NCBI RefSeq assembly: GCF_001194135.2
Contig: NC_069002.1
Location: 78,327 to 129,061 of the forward strand
Length of the DNA: 50,735 bases
Direction: 5' to 3'
From: Octopus bimaculoides
Lineage: Eukaryota
Part shown: one piece after another, positions 2,996-42,300 of the stretch
Position numbering within the stretch: the first letter of the stretch is position 1
How the letters are laid out: every line of letters starts with the position of its first letter
Translations under genes and position numbers: made by a program
The notes under the pieces: model-generated
Database searches by the model: none
What the model was told of the DNA's origin: nothing
Seen by the model: the letters and a program-made list of their open reading frames with translations, nothing else

Positions 2996-3901
2996 GACAA
3001 TGATCCCTCCAAGTCAATCAGGTCCTTTGCCAGAGACATAGGAGTGCTTGAGTTTCTTATTAGGCAGGTAGTGCATAAAGACATTCGGTATTCCTCATAC
3101 AAGATGAGAAAGGGCCAATTTTTATTCCAAGCCATCAAGGACAAGAAGAAATTCCGCTCGATGAAGCTTTTGAACAAACTCAAGCATCCCCTCCAACTGA
3201 GCATACTTTTGGTTTTTCTCAGACCAAGAAAAATTTCTACCAAGATCAGATGATGAACACACAGAACAACCGTTGGCCTGCCATGTCCCCAAAACATGTA
3301 CCAAGAGTGATAAAAATCAAACATCCAATCAACATCATGGTGTCTGGAGTGATCACTAGTGATGGTGACGTTATGCCTCCATTCATTTTTCCACACGGCT
3401 TCAGACTCAACATGGAGACCTACATCAAGTGCCTGGAGGAGGTAGTGCTGCCCTGGGTCAAGGGGTTGGCTGCTGGGAGACCTGCAACTGGACTCAGAAT
3501 CATGTTACACAAGCAGGATAACCCAGTCATAGCTGTCAGATGATTTCTCTGACAACATCACCCCTAACATCTGGTTGCCTAACTCCCCAGATTGCAACCC
3601 CTTGATTATTATGTGTAAGAGACCAACAAAACTTCTTATAACACCAAAGATGAACTGAAGGCACGGATTATGGCAGCATTCACCAACTTAAACGCGGAGA
3701 TTGTCCAAAAGAATCTCAAGAGATTCCAAAGTTGTCCGGAGGTCATAGTTGAAGCCAATGGTGATTTTATTGAATAAATTTACTCTTTAGGATTTCAAGA
3801 TATTTTTGGTGCAATTTTGGTAAATATATTTGTTAAAATGAGATGTCAGTGATATTTTCATTTTTGCATAATTTAGACATGACAATTTACTCACTGCACT
3901 C
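2996..3901 (+). mobile_element. Decayed Tc1/mariner-superfamily transposase, maT/DD37D type, 5'-truncated, with probable right end
   Basis: Frameshifted reading: SKSIRSFARDIGV (HTH), FSD.KNF, KHPINIMVSGVITSDGDVMPPFIFP, LD(3491)SESCYTS, WLPNSPDCNPL(D)YY, EANGDFIE*. There are 37 residues between the second and third catalytic D once a 1-nt deletion near 3603 is corrected. Confidence 0.85.
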
Positions 3902-7378: not shown

Positions 7379-9134
7379 GAAAAAAAAAGGCTAATATGAA
7401 ATACAACTCTGGAAATATTTCAGTATTATTCTGACCTCATCAATGAAACATACTCTCCACTGTACTGTATTTGGTATAGTACTGATGAAACAATCAAGTA
7501 AACACACAAGCTTTGTACACTGGTGAGCAGAGGTAATTAGGATTGTTGAGAAATTAAAGGACATTGTAAATAGTGTTATCAACTGGAATCTTGAACTATA
7601 AGAATAATCAAATAATAATGCTTACATTTCTTATGCTTTCATTTTCTTTAAACTGATGCTCCAGCGTGATCTTAAACATGATGAAAACAAATTGAAAAAC
7701 TAGTTTCATGCAACCTGCTTTTCTGAATATTTTTTAATAAGATAAATTGGATTGTTTATAGATGAATTTATGAGGAAAGGAGATTGATGACGACGACAAA
7801 ATATTTGAGAATAATTTTTCTCAACAGTAGGAAGAAACAAGTGTAACTAAGACAAATATAGCAAACCCATGCAACTATCGAATACATTAAATAAGCTACA
7901 ATGTTAAAGACCTACTTCAGAAAAAATAAGTAAATTCTATTTGACTGAGTTTATGTTAGATTCTTAAATAATTAGTTTGTTTTAGTGATGGATGAAGAAA
8001 ATAGAAGATGAAGTATAGTCAAAACCAAACATTTTTTATCTTATTTATTTTTTTAAATGCCTTTAAGATGAAAGGAATATTTTTACGTCATGAGGTTACT
8101 TACAAGGTCAAATAATTTGACGGGCATTCTTCTAGACAAAAACCAATGCTGTTTATCACAGTCAATAAACAAGACTTTCTTTCTCTAGCATGTAAGTGCT
8201 AGAAAAATTAGTTCATTAGAAATATTTACATGCTTTTTTATTTATATTCTATAATTTTGTTTTCACTTTCTTACCAAGATAGAACTAACAAGTGTTATTA
8301 ACCTAAAATGTTAAAGCAATATGGTTGCTTAGTGAATGGTTAATGCACCAAATACACTAACTAACACATTAGTTCACATCCTTGGACACTTTTTCTTGTG
8401 TATTTTATTTTATGTGCTTAAGAATCTTAATGCCCTCAATTAACTTCAATTATCACTTGAAACAGATTTACTTAAATATTAATATATACATACGAAAACC
8501 TGCCAGAACCTGTCCCTGGTTCTATAATATAAAGTGTTTTAAAGTGATTTAAACTAAAACTTTCCATCAAAATATCCTGTTATGTCCCAAACACCAGCTC
8601 AATAATGACAAAGTTATTTTACAAATTCTCCATTATTTTTTAAATTTATTGAAACAAAAGCAGTGTATTTCAACAGAAATGTGATAACAAAAGAGTTGAT
8701 ATGGATTATGTTGGGTTTTCTCCAAATTTTAGAGAGAGAGAGTATGTGTGTGTGTGTGTGTGTCTGCACACACAACAAAACCATGAACTAGAAACCCTTA
8801 AACGATCATCACCCTTAAGAAATATAATTCCTATGAAAGAACAATGAGGTTCAGGTATGAGATGAATATGAGACAGAATAGGGGGAAAAGGTATGTGCAC
8901 TGAGTGAAAATAGTGTGACAAGATCAGAGAGAAGAAACGAGTTGGATGCAAGAGAGACCAGTTCAGTGCATACAGAAGTAAAGAAAAGAGGATAACATAG
9001 CAGACTGGGTGTCAGAAGATGAGTTGCAAAAAGCCTCAATTCTGCTGAGATGGCTGGGTCTTCTCAACATGGCATAACACCATTCATTTTGGTCTTCCCT
9101 CACCACCGTCATCTCCCCAGAGGTTCAACATATA

Positions 9135-11520: not shown

Positions 11521-11880
11521 TTTACTTGTTTCAATCATCAGACCTCAACCATGCTGGGGCACCACCTTGAAAAATTCTTAGTTGAATGAATCAACCCCAG
11601 TATTTTATTATATTTTTTTTTAAGCCTAGTACTTATATTTTTTGCTGAACAGCTAAGTTATGGGGACATAAACACCCCAACACCAGATGTCAAGCGGTGG
11701 TGGGAGGACAAATACACACACACACAGAAGCTTCTTTCAGTTTCTGTCTACCAAATCCATTCAAAAGCTTTGGCCAGCCTGGGGCTGTAGTAGAAGACAC
11801 CCAAGATGCCATGCAATGGTATTGAACTCAGAACCATGTGACTGAAAAGCAAGCTGTTTACCACACAGCCATGCCTGGCC
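11521..11880 (-). mobile_element. tRNA-derived SINE family 2, near full length
   Basis: Reverse complement of the family at 33823-34080 and 33121-33310 (gctgtgtggtaaacagcttg...ggttctgagttcaa...gaaacaagtaaaa). Confidence 0.75.
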
Positions 11881-13269
11881 ATAAAATATTATGATAATGT
11901 CTGAATTAAAAAAATAATAATAAACTAAGAATATTGTTGGATGCCTTTGATCATAGTCAGCCAAATCCAGACTAATCTAAGACTAAACAATGACACCAAA
12001 TGATTTTGTTAAAGACAAAGATTAGTGCCAGTGATGGAAATGTCAACCAGCACCTCGAGGTACCCAGTTAGGATTGTCAACGTTGTTTATCAGAGCATGT
12101 AAAGAGCTAACAGTCACCTACAAATCAGTATGCATCAAGCATTTGCCAATTGTTTTAGGTGCTTACGTAGTTATGAACAAGCATAGACATCCTCTCAACT
12201 CTATCCTACATTGACCCAGAAGAACAACCAGGGTTTGTCATCTGAAAGGTAAGAAGTACACCAACGAATGAAATAGAGCAGAAGAGACTGGAGCAATGTA
12301 AAAGTGTCTTACTCAAGGATACAACACACACCACCTGTAGTCCAAGAACTGAATCGCATGACTGTGATGATTGTGATTCAAACACCCTAAACACACGGCC
12401 TAGAATATGGATAATTGAAAAAAAAGATCTTAGAATTTGTGGATGCTAATCCTTTAGAAGTTACCCTAGCCAAAAAGAAGTTATTTCAACATGATACTTG
12501 TAAACTAAATTCAAGAAGACATTTAGCAAAACTATAACCGTTTTGTCAAATTTTCAATATATTTCCTAGTCATAAATTTAATATTTATATAAATATAGGC
12601 AACACTGAATTTTACAGTTGCCTATATTGTACACCTGTGTATTAGGGGAGACTCCTGGCATCTATGCCACAGCATGCAATTATAAGAATCAAAACCATAT
12701 AATTGAAGCAGAGTACACATGGCATGTATGTACCCTCTTTTCCAGCTGTCTCATTTTAAAACTCAAAGATTTAAATTAAATTTGGATTTGTTAATTGTAT
12801 TAATCATCATTATTGCTTTAACATCTAGTTTTTTATGTTTGCATGGATCAGACAAAAGTATGTTGAGGCAAAGTTTTCTAAGGCCAGGTGCCCATTGTGT
12901 CACTAACCTCCATTTGTTTCTAAGCAGACTAATATTTTTCCAGTCGATCAAGTAACAAACAGAATGGACATGCTTTTTCAATGGACTGTAAGCAAATAAC
13001 ACCACAGTGATGTCTCTGTTTACAAGTGAACTCACGACAAATAAGCAAAATATGAACTCTCTCTTTCTCTCACGCGCACACACACACACACACACAAGTA
13101 ATTTCCACATTACGGCTATGTCAGAATATTGGGAAACTAAAGTATGACTATTAACTTTGGGATATGGTCTGTAATTTTGCTCTTACAGGAAACTAATATT
13201 GCATAGTTTTAAATTGTCAACTACTTAAAATTTACACTTTTTTATTAACTCCCACTCCATTGTAGCCCT

Positions 13270-13515
13270 ACTCAGCCAAAGGTGGGGGTCTGTCTTGCAA
13301 GCTGCATAGTGACCTCACTAGTCCTGGTGCCCCCAAAACAAAGCACCTAGTACACTTTAAAGTGGTCAGCATTATAAAGGGCATACAGTTATAGAAACCA
13401 TACCAGAGTAAACACTGGAATACAATGTTGTCTTCAGACCTGCTGGACACCAACACTTCTCAAACTGCCCAACCCATGCCAGCATGGAAATAAACATTTG
13501 ATGATGATGGTGACA
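13270..13515 (+). mobile_element. Diverged RTE-tailed element
   Basis: Ends in cccaacccatgccagcatggaaataaacatttgatgatgatgg. Confidence 0.6.
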
Positions 13516-14771
13516 ATGACGATATGTCAAGTTTTCTCTGTTGATGTGTGTTTGGAATACATCATAGGAGTATGTCAAATGGTATAATAGTAAATATAAA
13601 ACAACCCAATTCATATCAGTATGGTGGGGAGGGAACAATTTTGAAATGATGACAATCATTTTACATGCATGCATGTGTTTTAAAAGGTTATTCCTATTTC
13701 ATTCATCTCTTCATTGTTGTTGTTGTTGTTGTATGCTCCTCTCCCCATTTCCACCTTCCCTAAACCACCACACCCACCAAACCCACTGACTTCATAGAAC
13801 ATTATTTCAGACAGTAGTAGTCTAAGAACATTCAAGTGATTCACACCACAAATTCTTTTGCCAGCTTCCTCTAAGGACCGAAGCCACTCCACATCTCTTC
13901 CCAGATTGATTGCTATCTCTGGCTGTTGTTCTTTCAAGTAGCTCCTAACACTAAAAACTCTTAGGTCACATGATGTATTAACTGAACAACAAGCTGACTA
14001 CAATGACAACCAAGAGGACAACATAGTTGAAATATCTATAGACAACTATGAGGAATGAACTGTTTTTTGTTAAGGAATTTTTTTTATTCTGGAGAGGAGG
14101 GCCAGTTCTTTCCATTCTGATGGCCACCCACACTAAACTAAGCACTTTCTATTTTTACCTTTTGTCACATGCTACATTCCTCAAACTGATTTCCTGTACT
14201 AAATAGGAAGTTCGTCAATACAAACTTTTTTTGTTAAGTAGTTAATCAGGATAAAATTCTAACATGAGAAAACAAACAAAATAAAAAAGAATGTTTACGT
14301 ATTAAATGAAGTTTAACACTTAAGAGCCTTCTTGCACTTCAATCTGTTCCATGTGGGAAGTATATATATACCAATGACAATATTTCATAATTGAATGTTG
14401 TTGCTATTGTTGTTGTGTTGTGGTGTTATTTAGAACTGCAACTCTGTTACAGGAAATATCTATTAGAAGTCTGTTATTGGCACTGAAATGGATTTTTAAC
14501 AGCAAGAGAAAATAGCCAAAAAAAGAAATCTCTGGAAGATATCAGGAGAGCAGTGTCTCCAAAAAAAGAACTCATTTGGACCATGACAACCTGTTCAATC
14601 CATATAAGCATGGAAAGCAGACATAAAATGAAGATGGTAATGGAAATCCAGTAAAAGAATGTTTAAATAGATGTCTGACATGCTAAAAATAGCAGTCAGA
14701 TCTCCATTACATCACATCCTACAGGAATGCAAAAGCAGTAACCAAATTGCCTCAAATCACATCTTACAGTT

Positions 14772-19900: not shown

Positions 19901-20498
19901 ATCATCATCATCATCATCATCATCGTTTAGCTAGGTTGACTCAAAGGCCCTTCGATTCTAGTCCTTGCTTCCACACCTGGAACTTCTCTAGTTCTGATAG
20001 TGACTCAGCAATTAGGGCAAGGTCATCAGCATAGAGGAGCTCTCAGGGGCATTTTGTCTTGAATTCCTGTGTTATTGCCTGGAGGACTATGATAAATAGG
20101 AGGGGGCTGAGGACTGAACCTTGGTGGACCCCTACCTCTACCCAGAATTCTTCGCTGTACTCATTGCCAACCCTCACCTTACTGACAGCGTCCCTGTACA
20201 TGGCTTGCACACCTCTCACTAACCATTCATTTATCCCTAGTTTCCTCATTGACTACCAGATAAGGGATCGGGGGACCCTGTCAAAGGCTTTCTCCATGTC
20301 AACGAAAGCCAGGTACAGGGGTTTATCTTTGGCTATGTATTTCTCCTGCAGCTGTCTTGCCAGAAATATAGCATCAGTGGTGTTTTTCCCTGGCACGAAC
20401 CCAAACTGCATCTCATCTAAACTGACTCTCTCCCTTATTAGTTGGGCTATGACCCTCTCCATGACTTTCATTACCTGATCCAACAACTTACATCATAG
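19901..20498 (-). pseudogene. RTE LINE reverse-transcriptase fragment, about 190 codons in one frame with in-frame stops
   Basis: KLLDQVMKVMERV..QFGFVPGKNTTDAIF..FVDMEKAFDRVPR..GVHQGSVLSPLLF..P*ELLYADDLALIA..KGL*VNLAK. YADD is at 20022-20033. The reading is followed directly by (GAT)n at 19901-19924. Confidence 0.93.
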
Positions 20499-21170: not shown

Positions 21171-21429
21171 CATCATCATCATCATCATCATCGTTTAACG
21201 TCCGCTTTCCATGCTAGCATGGGTTGGACGATTTGACTGAGGACTGGCGGACCAGATGGCTACACCAGGCTCCAATCTGATTTGGCAGAGTTTCTACAGC
21301 TGGATGCCCTTCCTAACGCCAACCACTCAGAGAGTGTAGTGGGTGCTTTTACGTGTCACCCGCACGAAAACGGCCACGCTCGAAATGGTGTCTTTTATGT
21401 GCCACCCGCACAAGCCAGTCCAGGGGCAC
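21171..21429 (-). mobile_element. Young RTE 3' UTR copy A with (GAT)n tail, 5'-truncated
   Basis: Nearly identical to the reverse complement of 22857-23115. Confidence 0.88.
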
Positions 21430-22821
21430 CACTTACAAAATGTTTGTTTTTAAATGAAAAATCTTCCATTGTAATTTTATGTAAAAACATTTTTACTAAG
21501 TTCTATGCAAAACACTAACATTGTAACAAAAAAGTTAGTTTACTAAATCCCAAATTACTTTTAAAATCATTCAATTCATAGCAATAATATATTTCTTTAA
21601 AAATAGTGTCATGAATGAGTTAAAACACTTTATTTAAAATCAAAATACAAAATTATTTTCAAGTCTACAAATTCAAAATTTAATCATATTTCTAGTGTAA
21701 GGACATTGACATTGCACTTTGGAAGTAATCAAGAGTTTGGTGGGATATACAAAAATAACTTTTCAATTCCTTATTAACCTTTTGTTTGGAATGTATCTTA
21801 AGATTCTTGCATTAAAATATCATGGAAAGTCTAATATAAGTCTTCTGTTACATGAAGAATTTATTAAGACTAACTGTCATTATTAAGCTGTTATTTGGAA
21901 CATAAATTAACATCAAATATTGATGGAAGGTTGTTTGTTTTAGATCACTTTATAATAGGTTTGTATCACAGAACAAGGGGCAGTCTTGGACAGGACAGTA
22001 TTAAAAAGGTTAAACACATAAACTTTAAAATTGAGACCTCAGATAGGTTATACAAATATTACAAAAAGTTTAGTAGTCCTTTCTTAAAAATTTTTATTCA
22101 AATAAACAAGCTAAACATTTCTTAATGACAAGTAGAGACAAAAAATCACATTTATTGATTACATCATTAGATAACATTAACACGTGATCATTACACTATT
22201 AGCCAAAGCTGAGAAAGTAGATTGAATGACAGTTTACATTGAAAGCTAAGTCTGACTAATAACAATAATATCATGCCAGCCTGCAAAAGCAGCTAACATC
22301 CTTAATAGACAAACATTAAGTGGCAGTGTTATACTTAAAATAAGCCAAGGAATAAGAAGTCTAAGAATAAATATATTAGATATGGTAAAGTAAAATTTTA
22401 CATAGGCAACAGCTTTCTTTTTGTTGTTGTTTTCCTATTGCTCACATCTGCAATACCAAAATAGACTGCAGTGTGCTGGATCTGATCCCAGTTTTCAAAG
22501 TGCTAACTGGTTGAAGGGAGACACCACTTCACATAGAAGGGAATTCAATCTAACACAGATTTGCCAAAGTAAAGAATTTGAGCACAGTGCTGAAAATTAG
22601 TACAATGCTGGTCACTAACATTAACTGTACCACACTAGTTACACCTAGAGAGGAGGAGCTATGTCTCACAGGGCATGTCTACAGCTAGATGGACTGAACA
22701 ACTGTGCAGTATATCAATTTTAGCATACCAGAGTTATCTGAACTGTGTTACAATATTTTAGTGTATTGTCGATAAGCTTTAAGTGTGTTGCAAAATTGAG
22801 ACAAACCAGATCATAATTTTT

Positions 22822-23115
22822 GGCTCCTGTAGGATTTTCGAGCGAGATCGTTGCCAGTGCCCCTGGACTGGTTTGTGCGGGTGGCACATAAAAGACACCA
22901 TTTCGAGCGTGGCCGTTTTCGTGCGGGTGACACGTAAAAGCACCCACTACACTCTCTGAGTGGTTGGCGTTAGGAAGGGCATCCAGCTGTAGAAACTCTG
23001 CCAAATCAGACTGGAGCCTGGTGTTGCCATCCGGTTTCACCAGTCCTCAGTCAAATCGTCCAACCCATGCTAGCATGGAAAGCGGATGTTAAACGATGAT
23101 GATGATGATGATGAT
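22822..23115 (+). mobile_element. Young RTE 3' UTR copy B with (GAT)n tail
   Basis: gagatcgttgccagtgcccctggactgg (shared with bases 24-50 of the window) through gttaaacgatgatgat. Confidence 0.88.
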
Positions 23116-34299: not shown

Positions 34300-37136
34300 A
34301 GCAAAGAACTCCTGTAAAAGTATACGAGTTCCGGTCTCCACCAAATGGGGGGGGGGGCGGTGCCGGAGCCAACTTGTGACAGTTGAACGATTCATTATAT
34401 CAATATTGGCTCTCCACAAGCGAGCATACTCTCTACAATGGCTTGATTATCAGAGGTGTAACAGCCGTTATTCCACTACCCTTATGATGTAACCTGACTG
34501 CCTGATGTGACAACTGCAACCAACCTACACACATTAATATGATTTATAGTTGATTGTTGTTGTTTAGCTCAAAGTCTACCTTGATTGAACTGAACAATGA
34601 TCAAAAGCGTTCCAGCCGTGACCATGACCATCTAATAATTTTTCAATATTATTTTTTTAAGGGATAGCGTATCCAAGACTACTCAATGCAGTTCTGACGT
34701 TTAAAGACGTTGATTTCTTGAAGGTCGTGCAACCACGCAAAGGATACTCGATATAAAGGCACAGCCTAATAGGACTTTATATAGCCAATACCCTCAGTGT
34801 AAAAACAAAAGACAAATGGTTCTGAGTGGAATGCTTTTGACTGGAGGGCCTGCGTGATCAGGGATTTCCTAACGGCGAGTGTTTGGGCACGGTATCAATT
34901 TAGCATATTTATAATAATAATCCTGATTGCAGCACATTATTGAACACATCTAAAATGAAAAATAAAAGATTGACATACTGATTAAAGAATTCCAGACATC
35001 TCTTCAAAAACTGTTTCTTTTTTTTTTTTGCAAGTTCCAGGCCCCGAACATAAAAGTAGCACAGAGAACTTAGCTCACAAAATAATGAAGAGGTTCTCGT
35101 AAAATATTAGGATGTTAATATACACATATATATAGAGAGAGAGTGAGAGATTAACAACTACTAAAGTGATCCTATGCAAAAATAGCAGCCAAATTTCTTT
35201 CAATTCACACCCTACTATGTTAGAAAAAAATTGGAAGGACATTTTGGATGATGTGTAGAAAATAGGAGACGATCATGGCTGGGAAGCCTTTCATCGCATG
35301 CCTCTTTTTCCAGGGACAATCAATCGAAATTAGAAATCGCAACAAAACCTATAACGGGGTAGAAAAAGGGGTAAAAAAAAACAAAACAAAACAAATCGGA
35401 GGAGAAATCCGTAGACGTGTCTTTGACGAAGCTTTCTGTTCTATTATGACCGTCGTTAAGTCAGAAATAACCGAGAAATACATAAATCACACAAAAACAA
35501 GAACTTCATTGAATTTTCTGAAACAAACAAATATACTTAATTATGTTTATAAGTATAACATATGTTATTGTATAAACTAGATATTTAACAAGGATGATAT
35601 CGTTTGATACAATTTAGTAGTGTTTGCCATCACAATAGCTTTTAAAATAAGTTTAGGAAAATTTTTACTATTTCCACTCGTCTAATGAAACGATTTAAAT
35701 AGTAAAAATTTACCGAGAAAAGGGGATCAACCTTTTAGTTTGACCGAAAAGGGTACGGAATAGAAGTCGAGGTAAAATTGGGAAAAAAAATATTGAACAG
35801 AAGGAAAGAACCACCCAATTCCTTGTCCTATTCCATGAGGCAATGATAGTTATTCCGAAAGTCTGTCGAGGGAAGGAACAATAAATATTTACCAAAAGGA
35901 AGCTTATAGGATTCTTCATTTTTCCAATAAAAATCAAGATAAAATTCTAATGTTCCTCATAAATAAGTCTATCGTAATCTTATATTTGTAGTTTATTTGA
36001 AACGTTATGGAAATTGAAATTCATTGAACCATATGTTGGATCCCTTCAACGTTTAACTGTATATTTATTGTCATTTGCTAAAGTTTTAAAAAAAGTTAAG
36101 AAAAATCTGAAGAATTAAAAAGAAGGAAATTGTTTTAACACACACCCACTTGTAACGAACCAACGAGGAAGCCGCTGCACCGTCTTTCGGTTTACTAGAT
36201 ATAGCAGCTAAATCTCCTAAAATAAGAACATAACATCTTTACAGAAAAGGGTGGGGGAAAGAAAAGATGTGTATTGTAGTTTTAGATAGAAACAAAAAAA
36301 AAACGACAGTGATGCTCCGAACGTTTTGCTTACAGACCCAGTTCAACCAGGGCTGACCAGGGGCTAAATAACATTGCAAACAACTACTTGTATAAATTAG
36401 TATTGTGTGTGTGTAGCCCGAAGTCTCCGATAAAACAGAAATATGGTCAGACATTCCAGCCATGACCATCCAGTGCATTTGTATATTTAAGACTGTTCAA
36501 GGTGTTCTTTCTTTTCAGACTGGAGGAAGATTTGGCTGCTATTAATAGCAGGCAGTGTGACAGTATAAGCGGTTCAGTTGTTGGTGTGTGTGTGTGTGTG
36601 TGTGTAGATAGATAAATAATAGAATCAGATTGAAAATCAGTTTCCTCAGGATTTGTCGTTTCTTCTACAAAAATGTAGCAGAGTAAAGTGAATGAATGAG
36701 TTAAATGGGTTTCGAAACCGAGTCCACTATCTCCACTTTCGTGGGAGCCTATACTTTTTTTGCCCATGGTGTAGACCAATTTTTTTCTGCTTTCTTTTAT
36801 CGGAATGTTTTCAACCTTTAATATCTTTTCGCCTTCACTAAAGTGAAAACGGTGATTCGGTTTCGAACCCCAATTAAGTATCTTTTTGCAGTAGAAACGA
36901 ACGTCACCAACACTTATCGCTTCGATCAGATATAAAACAGGAAATCCCAATATGTATCGACCCAAAGTAGGGGATGATCGATATTATGAGGAGTATTTCA
37001 ACTGACGCAATAAGTCGTTTGTTTGAGACAAAGATTTCAAGAAACAAAAGCGAAAGAAACTTAACACATATGTGGTGTGTGTGTGCGTGTAAGATAAGAA
37101 AATATAATAGAAATTTCATGTTATATATACATACAT

Positions 37137-37173
<37 letters not shown>

Positions 37174-37337
37174 TATATTTTATTTACATGTCACACAAAC
37201 GTGAAATGGAAAAGAAAGAGATGTTTTTGATTTCAATAAGTAAACACCGCCCTACTTTTGTGGTTGTCATGTTGAGGGGGTGGGACACGAAACATATTTC
37301 TTGAACGGACGAAGACTTTTCACGTTCGACCAACAAC
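34300..37337 (-). promoter_or_regulatory. CpG-enriched zone, candidate DENND1 promoter or 5' region
   Basis: Visibly more CG dinucleotides in non-repeat sequence than in the CpG-poor flanks, with DRE-like TATCGA (36955) and ATCGATA (36977). It lies between the VPS13 end and DENND1 exon 2. Inference only. Confidence 0.35.
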
Positions 37338-38157
37338 NNNNNNNNNNNNNNNNNNNNNNNNNNNNNNNNNNNNNNNNNNNNNNNNNNNNNNNNNNNNNNN
37401 NNNNNNNNNNNNNNNNNNNNNNNNNNNNNNNNNNNNNNNNNNNNNNNNNNNNNNNNNNNNNNNNNNNNNNNNNNNNNNNNNNNNNNNNNNNNNNNNNNNN
37501 NNNNNNNNNNNNNNNNNNNNNNNNNNNNNNNNNNNNNNNNNNNNNNNNNNNNNNNNNNNNNNNNNNNNNNNNNNNNNNNNNNNNNNNNNNNNNNNNNNNN
37601 NNNNNNNNNNNNNNNNNNNNNNNNNNNNNNNNNNNNNNNNNNNNNNNNNNNNNNNNNNNNNNNNNNNNNNNNNNNNNNNNNNNNNNNNNNNNNNNNNNNN
37701 NNNNNNNNNNNNNNNNNNNNNNNNNNNNNNNNNNNNNNNNNNNNNNNNNNNNNNNNNNNNNNNNNNNNNNNNNNNNNNNNNNNNNNNNNNNNNNNNNNNN
37801 NNNNNNNNNNNNNNNNNNNNNNNNNNNNNNNNNNNNNNNNNNNNNNNNNNNNNNNNNNNNNNNNNNNNNNNNNNNNNNNNNNNNNNNNNNNNNNNNNNNN
37901 NNNNNNNNNNNNNNNNNNNNNNNNNNNNNNNNNNNNNNNNNNNNNNNNNNNNNNNNNNNNNNNNNNNNNNNNNNNNNNNNNNNNNNNNNNNNNNNNNNNN
38001 NNNNNNNNNNNNNNNNNNNNNNNNNNNNNNNNNNNNNNNNNNNNNNNNNNNNNNNNNNNNNNNNNNNNNNNNNNNNNNNNNNNNNNNNNNNNNNNNNNNN
38101 NNNNNNNNNNNNNNNNNNNNNNNNNNNNNNNNNNNNNNNNNNNNNNNNNNNNNNNNN

Positions 38158-38880
38158 TTTACAGGGTGGCCATAAAGTCGGGGTCCAAACATTTACAGGG
38201 TGGCCATAAAGTCGGGGTCCAAACATTTACAGGGTGGCCATAAAGTCGGGGTCCAAACATTTACAGAGTGGTCATAAAGTCGGGATCCAAACATTTACAG
38301 AGTGGTCATAAAGTCGGGGTCCAAACATTTACAGGGTGGCCATAAAGTCGGGGTCCAAACATCTACAGGGTGGCCATAATGTCGGGGTCCAAACATATAC
38401 AAGTGGCCATAAAGTCGGGGTCCAAACATTTACAAGTGGCCATAAAGTCGGGGTCCTAAATTTAAAGGGTTGCCATAAAGTTGGGGTCCAAACATTTACA
38501 ATCGGACATAAAGTCGGGGTGCAAAGATTTAGAGAGTGGCCATAAAGTCTGGATCCAAACATTTACAGGGTGGCCATGAACTCGGGGTCCAAACACTTAC
38601 AAGTGGACATAAAGTCGGGGTTCAAAAATTTACAAGTGGCCATAAAGTCGGGGTCCAAACATCTACAGGTGGCTATACAGTCGGGGTCCAAATATTTAGA
38701 AGTGGCCATAAAATCGGGGACCAAACATTTACAAGTGGACATAAAGCCGAGATCCAAGCATTTACAAATGGCCATAAAGTCAGGGTTGAAACATTTACAA
38801 GTGGCCATAAAGTCGGGGTCCAAACATTTACAAGTGGCCATAAGGTCGGGGTTGAAACAAGTACAAGTGGCCATAAAGTT
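38158..38880 (+). repeat. 33/34-bp tandem array 1
   Basis: Unit aca(gg/a)gtggccataaagtcggggtccaaacattt, about 21 visible copies; the left end runs into a gap. Confidence 0.95.
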
Positions 38881-40078
38881 CTTGTGGCCCTAGGCACCTT
38901 CTTGCTGCGCAAAACACATTTTAGCGACGCCAGACACGTTCTTGCGGCGCAAAGCACGTTTTAGCGACGCGAGGGACGTTTTTTCGGCCCCGGGCACGTT
39001 CTTGCGTTTCTAGGCACGTTATTGCAGCCCCAGACACGTTCTTGCCGCGCCAGGTACGTTATTGCGACACCGGGCACGTTCTTGCGGCATCNNNNNNNNN
39101 NNNNNNNNNNNNNNNNNNNNNNNNNNNNNNNNNNNNNNNNNNNNNNNNNNNNNNNNNNNNNNNNNNNNNNNNNNNNNNNNNNNNNNNNNNNNNNNNNNNN
39201 NNNNNNNNNNNNNNNNNNNNNNNNNNNNNNNNNNNNNNNNNNNNNNNNNNNNNNNNNNNNNNNNNNNNNNNNNNNNNNNNNNNNNNNNNNNNNNNNNNNN
39301 NNNNNNNNNNNNNNNNNNNNNNNNNNNNNNNNNNNNNNNNNNNNNNNNNNNNNNNNNNNNNNNNNNNNNNNNNNNNNNNNNNNNNNNNNNNNNNNNNNNN
39401 NNNNNNNNNNNNNNNNNNNNNNNNNNNNNNNNNNNNNNNNNNNNNNNNNNNNNNNNNNNNNNNNNNNNNNNNNNNNNNNNNNNNNNNNNNNNNNNNNNNN
39501 NNNNNNNNNNNNNNNNNNNNNNNNNNNNNNNNNNNNNNNNNNNNNNNNNNNNNNNNNNNNNNNNNNNNNNNNNNNNNNNNNNNNNNNNNNNNNNNNNNNN
39601 NNNNNNNNNNNNNNNNNNNNNNNNNNNNNNNNNNNNNNNNNNNNNNNNNNNNNNNCTGGAAACGCAAGAAATATCCGAGGCCGCAAGAACATGCCCGGGG
39701 CCGCAAGAACATGCCTTGAGTCGCTAGAACGTGCCTTGCGCCGAAAAAACGTGCCTAGGCCGAGAAGTACGTTTCTGGCGCCGCATGAAGGTGCCAGTTG
39801 CTGCAAGAAGGTTACTGGTACCGCAAGAACGTGCTAGGGGCAGTAACTAGGTGTCTTGAGCCGCTGGTGAGTGCCTGGGGCCGTATGTACGTTCCTAGGG
39901 CCATAAGTAGGAGCCGGGGCCTTAAGTACGTGCCCGGCGCCGCAAGAACGTGCCCGGCGCCGAAAGATCGTACTCGGGGCCGAAAGCACGTGCCTGACGC
40001 CGCAAGGACATTCCCGACACCGCAAGAACGAGTCCGGCGCCGGAAGCACGTGCCCAGATAGCAAGAACTTGCACGGCA
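38881..40078. repeat. ~21-bp GC-rich tandem array, forward left of the gap and inverted right of it
   Basis: ggcacgttcttgcggcgcc at 38881-39091 and ggcgccgcaagaacgtgcc at 39656-40078. Confidence 0.9.
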
Positions 40079-40470
40079 AGTGGCCATAAAGTCGGGGTTC
40101 AAACATTTACAAGTGGCCACAAAGTCGGCGACCAAGCATTTACAAGTGGCCATAAAGTCAGGGACCAAACATTTAGAAGTAGCCATAAAGTCGGGGTTCA
40201 AACATTTACAAGTGGCCATAAAGTCGGGGTCCAAACATTTACAAGTGGCCATAAAGTCGGGGTTCAAACAAGTACAAGCGGCCATAAAGTCGGGACCAAA
40301 CATTTACAAGTGGCCATAAAGTCGGGGTCCAAACATTTACAAGTGGCCATAAAGTCGGGGACCAAACATTTACAAGTGGCCATAAAGTCGGGGTTCAAAC
40401 AAGTACAAGTGGCCATAAAGTCGGGGTCCAAACATTTACAAGTGGCCATGAAGTCGGGTTTCAAACATTT
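40079..40470 (+). repeat. 33-bp tandem array 2, same orientation as array 1
   Basis: About 12 copies of acaagtggccataaagtcggggtccaaacattt. Confidence 0.95.
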
Positions 40471-40479
40471 ATCTGCGGA

Positions 40480-41795
40480 TGCACATACGTTCCTGCGGGG
40501 CCAGGCACGTTCTTGCGGCCCCGGGCATGTTCTTGCGTTTCCAGTTATGTTATTGAGGACCCAGACACGTTCTTGCAGCGCCAGGTACGNNNNNNNNNNN
40601 NNNNNNNNNNNNNNNNNNNNNNNNNNNNNNNNNNNNNNNNNNNNNNNNNNNNNNNNNNNNNNNNNNNNNNNNNNNNNNNNNNNNNNNNNNNNNNNNNNNN
40701 NNNNNNNNNNNNNNNNNNNNNNNNNNNNNNNNNNNNNNNNNNNNNNNNNNNNNNNNNNNNNNNNNNNNNNNNNNNNNNNNNNNNNNNNNNNNNNNNNNNN
40801 NNNNNNNNNNNNNNNNNNNNNNNNNNNNNNNNNNNNNNNNNNNNNNNNNNNNNNNNNNNNNNNNNNNNNNNNNNNNNNNNNNNNNNNNNNNNNNNNNNNN
40901 NNNNNNNNNNNNNNNNNNNNNNNNNNNNNNNNNNNNNNNNNNNNNNNNNNNNNNNNNNNNNNNNNNNNNNNNNNNNNNNNNNNNNNNNNNNNNNNNNNNN
41001 NNNNNNNNNNNNNNNNNNNNNNNNNNNNNNNNNNNNNNNNNNNNNNNNNNNNNNNNNNNNNNNNNNNNNNNNNNNNNNNNNNNNNNNNNNNNNNNNNNNN
41101 NNNNNNNNNNNNNNNNNNNNNNNNNNNNNNNNNNNNNNNNNNNNNNNNNNNNNNNNNNNNNNNNNNNNNNNNNNNNNNNNNNNNNNNNNNNNNNNNNNNN
41201 NNNNNNNNNNNNNNNNNNNNNNNNNNNNNNNNNNNNNNNNNNNNNNNNNNNNNNNNNNNNNNNNNNNNNNNNNNNNNNNNNNNNNNNNNNNNNNNNNNNN
41301 NNNNNNNNNNNNNNNNNNNNNNNNNNNNNNNNNNNNNNNNNNNNNNNNNNNNNNNNNNNNNNNNNNNNNNNNNNNNNNNNNNNNNNNNNNNNNNNNNNNN
41401 NNNNNNNNNNNNNNNNNNNNNNNNNNNNNNNNNNNNNNNNNNNNNNNNNNNNNNNNNNNNNNNNNNNNNNNNNNNNNNNNNNNNNNNNNNNNNNNNNNNN
41501 NNNNNNNNNNNNNNNNNNNNNNNNNNNNNNNNNNNNNNNNNNNNNNNNNNNNNNNNNNGGGGCACGTTCTTGCGGTGTCGGGAATGTCCTTGCGGCGGCA
41601 GGCACGTGCTTTCGGCCCCGAGTACGATCTTGCGGCGCGGGGCACGTTCTTGCGGTGTCGGGAGTGTTCTTGTACCTGGCGCTGCAAGAACGTTTCTGGG
41701 GCCGCAATAACATGACTGGAAACGCAAGAAATATCCGGGGCCGCAAGAACATGCCTTGAGTCGCTAGAACGTGCCTTGCGCCGAAAAAACGTCTC
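40480..41795. repeat. Second ~21-bp array block: forward, gap, forward, then inverted
   Basis: 40518-40587 and 41672-41740 are near reverse complements of each other. Confidence 0.88.
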
Positions 41796-41914
41796 CCCAC
41801 ACAAAACAAAATATTTCATAAATAAGTGGTGTTATTAAATTAGACATGGCCTGGGCCAATCGTTGTTCAAAACAAGGTATAACTTAGATAAGTTATATCT
41901 AGATATATATATCA

Positions 41915-42300
41915 TGACCATTGCCATTTCTTATCCACTTTCCATGCTGGCATGGCCTAGACAGTTTGACTGGAACTGGCAAGCCGGGCAGCTGCACCTG
42001 GTTCTAGTCTGATTTGGGGTTGGATTCTAAGGCTGGATGCCCTTACTAACCCCAACTCCTCCAAGAGTGGAGTGGCTGCCTTTCACATGTCACTGGCATG
42101 GATGCAGTCACAACTCGAATTTCACTAAAATTCTCTCAAGCCCAGCAAATCGCCAAAGGTCATCATCACAAGCGTCACTGCCTCTCTGGCATTCCACATT
42201 TGAAGATCATGCTTCACCACCTTATCCCATGTCTTCCTGGGTCTACCTCTTCCACAGTTAGAGATGAGATCAGCATTTCTTTACACAGCTATCCATGTAT
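41915..42300 (-). mobile_element. Old RTE LINE 3' end (ORF terminus plus UTR)
   Basis: The minus strand reads CGRGRPRKTWDKVVKHDLQ, and the tail ttccatgctggcatgg is at 41941. Confidence 0.75.

What the first reader, a model, noticed from the sequence alone, without database searches (positions are those of the whole stretch)
38158..41795. GC-rich higher-order satellite with built-in palindromes (foldback-like)
Seen in sequence: the order is [33/34-bp direct array][21-bp array forward...inverted][33-bp array][21-bp array forward...inverted]. Specific variant-unit strings recur at long range. 38987-39057 matches 40518-40587 (direct), 39656-39750 matches 41715-41790 (direct), 40518-40587 matches 41672-41740 (inverted), and 39955-40035 matches 41559-41640 (inverted). 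This implies a ~1.5-2 kb higher-order unit containing long inverted arms. Inference: it is either a palindromic satellite or a Foldback-type transposon with modular TIRs. It is a CpG-dense island in a CpG-poor context, could form cruciforms, and sits between two housekeeping genes. Four gaps hide much of it.
Basis: partly seen in the sequence, partly recalled or inferred. Interest (0 to 1): 0.7.

Follow-up and report, generated by a model that had tools for sequence, protein, structure and literature searches.

The report
Octopus chromosome-end satellite block with inversions
This is not a transposon but a local block of two tandem-repeat families that mark the ends of many Octopus bimaculoides chromosomes, arranged here in alternating orientations; it is an ordinary kind of subtelomeric DNA that seems not to have been described for this animal.

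Summary
Window 38158-41795 reads [33/34-bp array +][20-bp array fwd|gap|rev][33-bp array +][20-bp fwd|gap|fwd, then rev], then unique DNA. The short period is 20, not 21. All four long-range matches are real (87-94% identity against a 73.5% background). 42% of the span is unread N.

The genome is the Octopus bimaculoides chromosome-scale assembly; the block lies 116-120 kb from the start of scaffold C22.

The 33/34-bp unit belongs to a satellite found at 15 or more chromosome-scale scaffold ends. Fifteen of 18 placed loci lie within 120 kb of an end (P about 1e-34). It has two shared subfamilies: distal alpha (33 bp) and proximal beta (34 bp). The outermost array has the same polarity relative to the terminus in 11 of 12 ends. 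The window holds the beta type plus a private 33-bp derivative.

The 20-bp GC- and CpG-rich unit is a separate minisatellite family, also concentrated near the ends (11 of 15 loci within 230 kb). Polarity switches inside contiguous sequence are common in both families, often centred on the unit's own short palindromes.

The composite junction is unique in the genome and the flanks are not shared, so a Foldback transposon is not supported. Verdict: a new member of a known kind, of modest interest.

The parts
37338..38157 (.). Assembly gap that hides the left boundary of array A
   Evidence: The sequence to its left (36500-37337) is unique in the genome.
38158..38879 (+). Array A of the chromosome-end satellite: seven 34-bp beta-type units (38158-38395), then 33-bp derived units
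   Evidence: TRF gives 21.6 copies and score 976. Unit list. Subfamily assignment.
38880..39091 (+). 20-bp GC-rich minisatellite in forward polarity; contains block X'W' (38936-39057)
   Evidence: GC 58%, CpG observed/expected 1.37.
39092..39655 (.). Assembly gap; the forward-to-reverse polarity switch of the first unit must lie here
   Evidence: Polarity markers are forward on the left side and reverse on the right side.
39656..40076 (-). 20-bp minisatellite in reverse polarity; contains block X (39656-39752) and block Y' (39933-40030)
   Evidence: It joins array B at a shared GCAAG motif.
40077..40471 (+). Array B, twelve 33-bp units, same strand as array A
   Evidence: TRF score 629. 87% identical to array A against 70-81% to other chromosomes.
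40472..40589 (+). 20-bp minisatellite, forward; block X'W' (40503-40588) is the left arm of an inverted repeat
   Evidence: 91% inverted match to 41672-41756.
40590..41558 (.). Assembly gap inside the second 20-bp block
   Evidence: Register across the gap is uninformative.
41559..41672 (+). 20-bp minisatellite, forward (block Y, 41565-41662)
   Evidence: 95% inverted match to 39933-40030.
41644..41693 (.). Polarity switch seen in read sequence: GTTCTTG-TACCTGGCGCTG-CAAGAAC. As single-stranded DNA it folds into a 19-bp stem with a 12-nt loop.
   Evidence: Fold energy -34.9 kcal/mol, z-score -3.2 against shuffles.
41673..41795 (-). 20-bp minisatellite, reverse (blocks W and X); the array ends near 41783 and unique DNA follows
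   Evidence: 96% direct match of 41723-41792 to 39682-39752.
41895..42300 (+). Flanking SINE-like dispersed repeat, not part of the satellite
   Evidence: More than 6000 first-look candidates; scored copies on many chromosomes at 72-76% identity.

Best explanation
The region is a non-mobile block of subtelomeric tandem repeats in Octopus bimaculoides. It combines two families.

(a) The beta (34-bp) subfamily of a satellite that caps many chromosome-scale scaffold ends, plus a local 33-bp derivative of it.

(b) A 20-bp GC- and CpG-rich minisatellite family that also concentrates within a few hundred kb of chromosome ends.

Shown:
- the layout;
- the chromosome-end distribution of both families;
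- subfamily consensus sequences shared between chromosomes;
- a fixed polarity of the outermost arrays relative to the terminus;
- frequent polarity switches inside contiguous sequence.

Inferred:
- The arrays grow and homogenise by unequal exchange and gene conversion. This acts most strongly within a locus (A vs B 87%) and more weakly between non-homologous chromosome ends (70-81%, yet with identical subfamily consensus).
- Polarity switches arise when a broken or stalled 3' end folds back, or switches template, at the short palindromes built into each unit. These are ACGT and GGCGCC in the 20-mer and TGGCCA and GGWCC in the 33/34-mer. This is the way fold-back inverted duplications form at chromosome ends in yeast and humans.
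- A composite of about 1.5-2 kb was then duplicated once and remodelled.
- The high CpG content fits GC-biased gene conversion in a recombination-rich subtelomere, or absence of germline methylation.

The block probably has no sequence-specific function beyond being subtelomeric, recombination-prone, probably heterochromatic DNA.
For: Organism. A hit named Octopus bimaculoides lies on a contig of 35,489,836 bp, exactly the length of G000:C25.

33/34-bp family.
- Arrays of 1-18 kb reach or lie near the termini of C1e, C2e, C3s, C5e, C6s, C7s, C11s, C12s, C14e, C18s, C18e and C19e. They lie 22-118 kb in on C8s, C4s and C22s (s = scaffold start, e = scaffold end).
- Only three small internal sites were found.
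- 15 of 18 placed loci are within 120 kb of an end, P about 1e-34.
- The same alpha and beta consensus occurs on 8 or more chromosomes. The order is unique DNA, beta, mixed, alpha, terminus.
- The outermost array has the same inward polarity in 11 of 12 ends, P = 0.006.

20-bp family.
- 11 of 15 placed loci are within 230 kb of an end, P about 1e-21.

Polarity switches in contiguous sequence.
- 20-mer loci: six '-' to '+' switches centred on ACGT.
- 33/34-mer loci: switches centred on TGGCCA (C6, C12) or GGWCC (C12).

Not mobile.
- The junction is unique in the genome.
- Flanks are not shared.
Against: - True (TTAGGG)n telomeres are not assembled at any scaffold end. No telomere-to-satellite junction of the expected type was found. 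'Subtelomeric' therefore rests on scaffold coordinates from a short-read plus Hi-C assembly.
- This block is 116-120 kb from the scaffold start, not at it. The first 10 kb of C22 carries neither family.
- Genome searches score only the best candidates, so the census is a lower bound and could be biased.
- Arms around the switches are no more alike than ordinary units. The fold-back origin is therefore inferred from junction positions only.
- 42% of the region is unread.
Confidence: 0.75

Rival explanations
1. Assembly artefact. The two-copy, alternating-polarity layout would come from small repeat contigs (934, 934 and about 240 bp) being misoriented, or from two haplotypes being placed in tandem. 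The real locus would be a simpler array.
For: - Three gaps lie in or next to the block, and 42% of it is N.
- Nearly every array of both families elsewhere is bounded by gaps.
- Two contigs have exactly the same length, 934 bp.
- Counterpart blocks differ by 4-13% and in array length, as alleles of a variable repeat might.
Against: - Contig 39656-40589 alone carries reverse 20-mers, a 33-bp array and forward 20-mers in one read stretch.
- The contig starting at 41559 carries a forward-to-reverse switch internally. Inversions therefore do not depend on contig orientation.
- More than 20 such switches occur inside contiguous sequence at 10 or more other loci.
Confidence: 0.12
2. The 33/34-bp satellite is centromeric, or pericentromeric, on telocentric or acrocentric chromosomes, not telomere-associated. 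It would sit at scaffold ends because the centromeres do.
For: - 13 of 14 chromosomes carry it at one end only.
- Related octopods have some telocentric and subtelocentric chromosomes, and mainly centromeric C-bands (PMC5646656, PMC6160780).
Against: - One chromosome with both ends positive is close to the 1.8 expected for 15 random ends (my arithmetic).
- The six largest scaffolds all carry it, whereas most octopod chromosomes are metacentric (PMC5646656).
- Assembled arrays are small.
- Polarity is fixed relative to the terminus.
- A short (CCCTAA)n tract abuts one array.
Confidence: 0.08
3. A Foldback-type transposon whose long terminal inverted repeats are built from 20-bp subrepeats, with the 33-bp array as its internal or flanking module.
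For: - Inverted 20-bp arrays flank a 33-bp array. Matched arms of 86-122 bp are 84-91% identical.
- The single strand folds back with z = -5.9.
- Drosophila FB elements have inverted repeats made of 10-, 20- and 31-bp subrepeats (from my own knowledge).
Against: - No second copy of the composite junction exists in 2.34 Gb.
- The array end at about 41783 is not a conserved terminus: the same motif continues as array at 39740-39760.
- Flanks are unique or an unrelated SINE-like repeat.
- Both families occur alone and are restricted to chromosome ends, not dispersed.
- No transposase lies nearby.
Confidence: 0.03

Closest known systems
Subtelomeric (telomere-associated) satellite DNA, e.g. Drosophila TAS arrays, human TAR1 and subtelomeric repeat blocks, subtelomeric satellites of bivalves and plants
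   Same: - Short-unit tandem arrays on many non-homologous chromosome ends.
- Subfamilies shared between chromosomes (concerted evolution).
- A proximal-to-distal zonation.
- A fixed polarity towards the terminus.
   Different: - Sequence unrelated to any named family I could find.
- Adjacency to (TTAGGG)n is not shown, because the telomeres are unassembled.
- This copy lies 116-120 kb inside the scaffold and is interleaved with a second family.
GC-rich hypervariable minisatellites clustered in human subtelomeres (from my own knowledge)
   Same: - 20-bp unit with 54-66% GC.
- Arrays of 0.1-5 kb.
- Strong clustering within a few hundred kb of chromosome ends.
- CpG retained in a CpG-poor genome.
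   Different: - One sequence family at many loci, not many unrelated loci.
- Frequent polarity switches within arrays.
- Length variability and any recombination hotspot role are untested.
Fold-back inverted duplications and palindromes formed at broken chromosome ends (yeast palindromic amplification; human terminal inverted duplications)
   Same: - Head-to-head junctions centred on, or a few bases from, short pre-existing palindromes, with small spacers (12 nt at window 41672).
- Located at chromosome ends.
   Different: - The events here are old: arms are 75-85% alike.
- They lie within satellites.
- No associated terminal deletion can be assessed.
Foldback (FB) transposons of Drosophila and FB-like elements
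   Same: Inverted arrays built from short tandem subrepeats that can snap back as single strands.
   Different: - No conserved termini and no target-site duplication seen.
- No dispersed copies and no transposase.
- The components are independent chromosome-end satellites.

Membership tests
Subtelomeric / telomere-associated satellite | Head-to-tail tandem array of a short unit | tested here: met
   TRF gives 21.6 and 12 copies at 85-88% matches. Units are listed.
Subtelomeric / telomere-associated satellite | Family present at the ends of many non-homologous chromosomes and rare elsewhere | tested here: met
   15 scaffold ends on 14 chromosomes and 3 small internal sites; P about 1e-34. The window copy itself is 116-120 kb from the C22 start.
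Subtelomeric / telomere-associated satellite | Lies directly next to the terminal telomere repeat | tested here: inconclusive
   No (TTAGGG)8 tract lies at any scaffold terminus. Chimeric telomere-plus-satellite queries found only C6:17603-17778, a 26-bp (CCCTAA) tract at the inner edge of an array.
Subtelomeric / telomere-associated satellite | Cytological location at chromosome tips (FISH) or Bal31 sensitivity | not testable with these tools
   Needs wet-lab work.
GC-rich subtelomeric minisatellite | 10-60-bp GC-rich unit in arrays of 0.1-30 kb | tested here: met
   20-bp unit with 54-66% GC; arrays of about 0.1-0.4 kb in the window and up to several kb elsewhere.
GC-rich subtelomeric minisatellite | Loci clustered towards chromosome ends | tested here: met
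   11 of 15 placed loci within 230 kb of an end, 12 within 700 kb, 3 internal.
GC-rich subtelomeric minisatellite | Length hypervariability between individuals | not testable with these tools
   Only one assembly is available.
Foldback (FB) transposon | Long terminal inverted repeats made of tandem subrepeats | tested here: met
   Inverted 20-bp arrays with matched arms at 84-95% identity. This is true in form only.
Foldback (FB) transposon | Conserved outer termini shared by copies | tested here: not met
   The motif at the right end also occurs inside array 39740-39760. No other locus shares the ends or flanks.
Foldback (FB) transposon | Multiple dispersed copies of the whole element, with target-site duplications | tested here: not met
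   The junction-spanning query hits only itself in 2.34 Gb. The left end is hidden in a gap, so a duplication could not be read.
Higher-order-repeat (HOR) satellite | Three or more tandem copies of a multi-monomer unit with identical internal junctions | tested here: not met
   Only two copies. The two 33-to-20 junctions differ, and the distance from junction to block X'W' is 107 vs 46 bp.
Helitron/MITE-associated satellites of molluscs | Short arrays embedded between conserved element flanks found genome-wide | tested here: not met
   The left flank is unique. The right flank is an unrelated SINE-like repeat that starts about 100 bp away.

The most novel reading that the evidence does not exclude
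Octopus chromosome ends share a conserved architecture. It is zoned (unique DNA, beta 34-mer, alpha 33-mer, terminus), fixed in polarity, and carries an inherited head-to-head inversion at six or more ends. This pattern would be kept uniform by frequent exchange between non-homologous ends, or by repeated fold-back healing.

On that reading, the beta-only C22 block (and a similar one on C4 at 117 kb) is an interstitial relic of a former terminus onto which about 116 kb was later captured. That would make chromosome-end turnover in cephalopods directly testable.
Probability: 0.15. Interest if true: 0.5.

Novelty: new member of a known kind. Interest (0 to 1): 0.3.

Why it matters
- It gives cephalopod genomics sequence markers for chromosome ends: the alpha and beta 33/34-mers and the 20-mer. 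Full-text searches of the held library found no description of subtelomeric repeats for any cephalopod. TTAGGG is the only telomere motif determined experimentally in the group (PMC13218726).
- The markers can be used as FISH probes.
- They can be used to judge whether scaffold ends are true chromosome ends, and to flag possible mis-scaffolding. Examples are the beta arrays 116-118 kb inside C22 and C4.
- They can be used to study exchange between chromosome ends.
- For the finding itself the result is deflationary: it is ordinary subtelomeric satellite DNA, not a new mobile element.

Tried and rejected
- Rfam on the whole window: no family at gathering score.
- Foldback transposon: rejected for lack of shared termini, flanks or further copies.
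- Regular higher-order repeat: rejected. There are only two copies and their junctions differ.
- Recent perfect palindromes or cruciforms: arms flanking 20 switches are 73-90% alike and not symmetric about the centre. Only the 41672 site gives a modest hairpin.
- Telomere adjacency: a (TTAGGG)8 scan and two chimeric telomere-plus-satellite queries found only the short C6 interstitial tract.
- Cross-species reach: translating the 11-codon periodic ORF of array B and searching 5.8 billion proteins gave no hit at E <= 0.001.
- Gene context: ten long ORFs against Pfam gave only RVT_1 remnants. Short exons were not searched, so 'between two housekeeping genes' stays untested.
- Literature: four full-text searches found nothing on cephalopod subtelomeric or satellite repeats.
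Full report
**Observation**

I read window 37800-42200 and ran Tandem Repeats Finder.

- Array A, 38158-38879, 21.6 copies. It has seven 34-bp units, TTTACAGGGTGGCC..., then 33-bp units, TTTACAAGTGGCC....
- A 20-bp array, forward, 38880-39091.
- Gap 39092-39655.
- The 20-bp array, reverse, 39656-40076.
- Array B, 40077-40471, twelve 33-bp units on the same strand as A.
- 20-bp forward, 40472-40589.
- Gap 40590-41558.
- 20-bp forward, 41559-41672.
- A polarity switch visible in read sequence.
- 20-bp reverse up to about 41783, then unique DNA.

The short period is 20 bp, not 21. Their identities are 87, 90, 91 and 94%, against 73.5 +/- 7% for randomly paired segments of the same arrays.

The 20-bp arrays have 54-66% GC and CpG observed/expected 0.99-1.37. 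The whole window has 36% GC and 0.36.

**Gaps**

- N makes up 42% of the finding.
- Across gap 39092-39655 the polarity of the 20-mer flips. The sides are therefore not continuous in any simple sense, and a switch or a misoriented contig is hidden there.
- Across gap 40590-41558 both sides are forward. Their register is off by 17 of 20 at the estimated length, which says nothing because the length is only an estimate.
- The left edge of array A is hidden in gap 37338-38157.
- The inversions do not depend on how contigs were oriented. Contig 39656-40589 alone carries reverse 20-mers, a 33-bp array and forward 20-mers. The contig starting at 41559 carries a forward-to-reverse switch internally.

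**Where the window comes from**

The window is G000:C22:78327-129061 in a 2.34-Gb genome of 145,327 contigs. A Tc1/mariner-like ORF in the window hit a protein named 'uncharacterized protein LOC128250757 [Octopus bimaculoides]'. That protein lies on a contig of 35,489,836 bp, which is exactly the length of G000:C25. The genome is therefore the chromosome-scale Octopus bimaculoides assembly. The block lies 116-120 kb from the start of the 37.7-Mb scaffold C22.

**The 33/34-bp family is a chromosome-end satellite**

Searching the genome with the unit and with array A, and reading the fetched loci, gave the following (s = scaffold start, e = scaffold end):

- Arrays of 1-18 kb run to, or within a few kb of, the termini of C1e, C2e, C3s, C5e, C6s, C7s, C11s, C12s, C14e, C18s, C18e and C19e.
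- Arrays lie 22-25 kb inside C8s and about 117 kb inside C4s and C22s.
- Only three small internal sites were seen: C2:145.13 Mb, C3:129.53 Mb and C6:109.87 Mb.
- Fifteen of 18 placed loci within 120 kb of an end has a binomial probability near 1e-34.
- A 30-nt core occurs 311 times with up to 3 mismatches, and 0 times in the reversed control.

Monomers extracted from 12 loci fall into two subfamilies whose consensus is the same on many chromosomes:

- alpha, 33 bp: GGCCATAAAGTCGGGGACCAAAAATTGAACACT
- beta, 34 bp: GGCCATAAAGTCGGGGTCCAAACATTT[A/G]CACA[C/G]T

The order is unique DNA, beta, mixed, alpha, terminus at C1e, C18e, C14e, C19e, C12s, C6s and C3s. The window holds beta-type units plus a private 33-bp derivative. 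This fits its 70-81% identity to other chromosomes, against 87% between arrays A and B.

The outermost array has the same polarity, read inward from the terminus, at 11 of 12 ends (P = 0.006). At six ends an inner array of the opposite polarity follows.

**The 20-bp family is a separate subtelomeric minisatellite**

Searching with 41559-41795 and with a 34-nt pattern, together with the scaffold lengths, placed arrays as follows:

- Near scaffold starts: C9 (10-14 and 215-222 kb), C25 (3.8 kb), C2 (191 kb), C24 (209 kb), C10 (659 kb).
- Near scaffold ends: C24 (227 kb from the end), C8 (8 kb), C5 (0.8 kb), C23 (84 kb), C14 (170 kb), C21 (185 kb).
- Three internal sites.

Eleven of 15 placed loci lie within 230 kb of an end (P about 1e-21). 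Identity to the window is at most 81%. These arrays mostly occur without the 33/34-mer. The two families lie within 5 kb of each other only here, at the C5 end and on unplaced contig C105048.

**Polarity switches are a property of both families**

Marker scans found more than 20 switches inside contiguous sequence at 10 or more loci.

- In the 20-mer, six '-' to '+' switches are centred on the unit's ACGT core (GCAAGAACGTTCTTGC-like).
- In the 33/34-mer, switches are centred on TGGCCA (C6, C12) or GGWCC (C12).
- The window switch reads GTTCTTG-TACCTGGCGCTG-CAAGAAC. As single-stranded DNA it forms a 19-bp stem with a 12-nt loop (z = -3.2).
- Contig 39656-40589 closes on itself through its reverse and forward 20-mers (z = -5.9).
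- Arms around the switches are only 73-90% alike and are not symmetric about the centre. The events are therefore old, and stable cruciforms in duplex DNA are unlikely.

**Not a transposon**

- A query spanning the 20r-to-33 junction matches only itself across the junction.
- The left flank is unique in the genome.
- The right flank becomes a SINE-like repeat with thousands of copies about 100 bp beyond the array.
- The motif at the right end of the array also occurs inside the first unit, where the array simply continues.
- The two 33-to-20 junctions differ, so even the local duplication is imperfect.

**Mechanism**

Shown: the layout, the chromosome-end distribution, the shared subfamilies, the polarity rule, and the junction positions.

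Inferred:

- Arrays expand and homogenise by unequal exchange and conversion, strongly within a locus and weakly between chromosome ends.
- Inversions arise by fold-back priming or template switching at the palindromes inside each unit, as described for terminal inverted duplications in yeast and humans (from my own knowledge).
- A composite of about 1.5-2 kb was duplicated once.
- CpG richness reflects GC-biased conversion or a lack of germline methylation.

**Limits**

- No (TTAGGG)n tract lies at any scaffold terminus. The 99 hits to (TTAGGG)8 are short interstitial tracts.
- Chimeric telomere-plus-satellite queries recovered only a 26-bp (CCCTAA) tract at the inner edge of the C6 array.
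- TTAGGG is the only telomere motif determined experimentally in cephalopods (PMC13218726, PMC6160780).
- 'Subtelomeric' therefore rests on Hi-C scaffold coordinates.
- A centromeric reading for telocentric chromosomes cannot be fully excluded, though the six largest scaffolds all carry the satellite and most octopod chromosomes are metacentric (PMC5646656).
- Genome searches score only the best candidates, so all counts are lower bounds.
- I could not fetch all 60 ends.

**Verdict**

This is a real feature, correctly observed. It is best read as ordinary subtelomeric satellite and minisatellite DNA with old inversions. It is new for this species as far as the held literature shows. It is a new member of a known kind, with interest about 0.3.

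Noticed in passing
L013-L023 (C1, C3, C6, C12, C14, C18, C19 ends): The chromosome-end satellite has two subfamilies: alpha (33 bp, distal) and beta (34 bp, next to unique DNA). Each has the same consensus on many chromosomes. At six ends an outer array is followed by an inner array of the opposite polarity.
   Followed up: partly
L013 7753-7778 (G000:C6:17753-17778): A short (CCCTAA)3.6 tract sits exactly at the inner edge of the beta array, in the orientation of a left-end telomere. It could be a relic telomere or the tail of a transposable element.
   Followed up: partly
G000, genome-wide: 99 matches to (TTAGGG)8 are all short interstitial tracts. None lies at a scaffold terminus, so true telomeres are missing from this assembly.
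   Followed up: no
window 38158-39091 and 39656-40589: The two gap-bounded contigs inside the finding are both exactly 934 bp long although their content differs. Unexplained, possibly coincidence.
   Followed up: no
G000:C4:117301-118213 (L017 4301-5213): A beta-only array sits about 117 kb from the start of C4, almost the same distance as the C22 block. The window's left flank is unique, so this is not a shared duplicated segment. It could be coincidence or a scaffolding pattern.
   Followed up: partly
L029 228-4176, L030 22-3478, L032 610-2322 (C21, C23, C24): The 20-bp arrays on these chromosomes adjoin kilobases of (GTTC/ACGA)-type short repeats such as cgttcgttcgttc. This hints that the 20-mer, which contains ACGTTCTTGC, grew out of such a microsatellite.
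   Followed up: no
G000:C105048 (unplaced, at least 14.3 kb): This unplaced contig holds both families: a 20-mer at 7446 and 33/34-mer arrays at 11874-14306. It is one of only three places found where they lie within 5 kb of each other.
   Followed up: no
window 20046-20492 (-), 3079-3540 (+), 41895-42300, 1-285, 21237-21515, 22723-23046: The window is rich in transposon remnants. These are reverse-transcriptase fragments (Pfam RVT_1), a Tc1/mariner-like ORF related to O. bimaculoides LOC128250757, and several copies of a SINE-like repeat with thousands of genomic copies.
   Followed up: partly
window 40056-40090, 38866-38900, 40455-40490: The junctions between the two families fall at short shared motifs: GCAAG at the 20r-to-33 junction, and GT or TT at the two different 33-to-20f junctions. 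This suggests microhomology-mediated joins.
   Followed up: no
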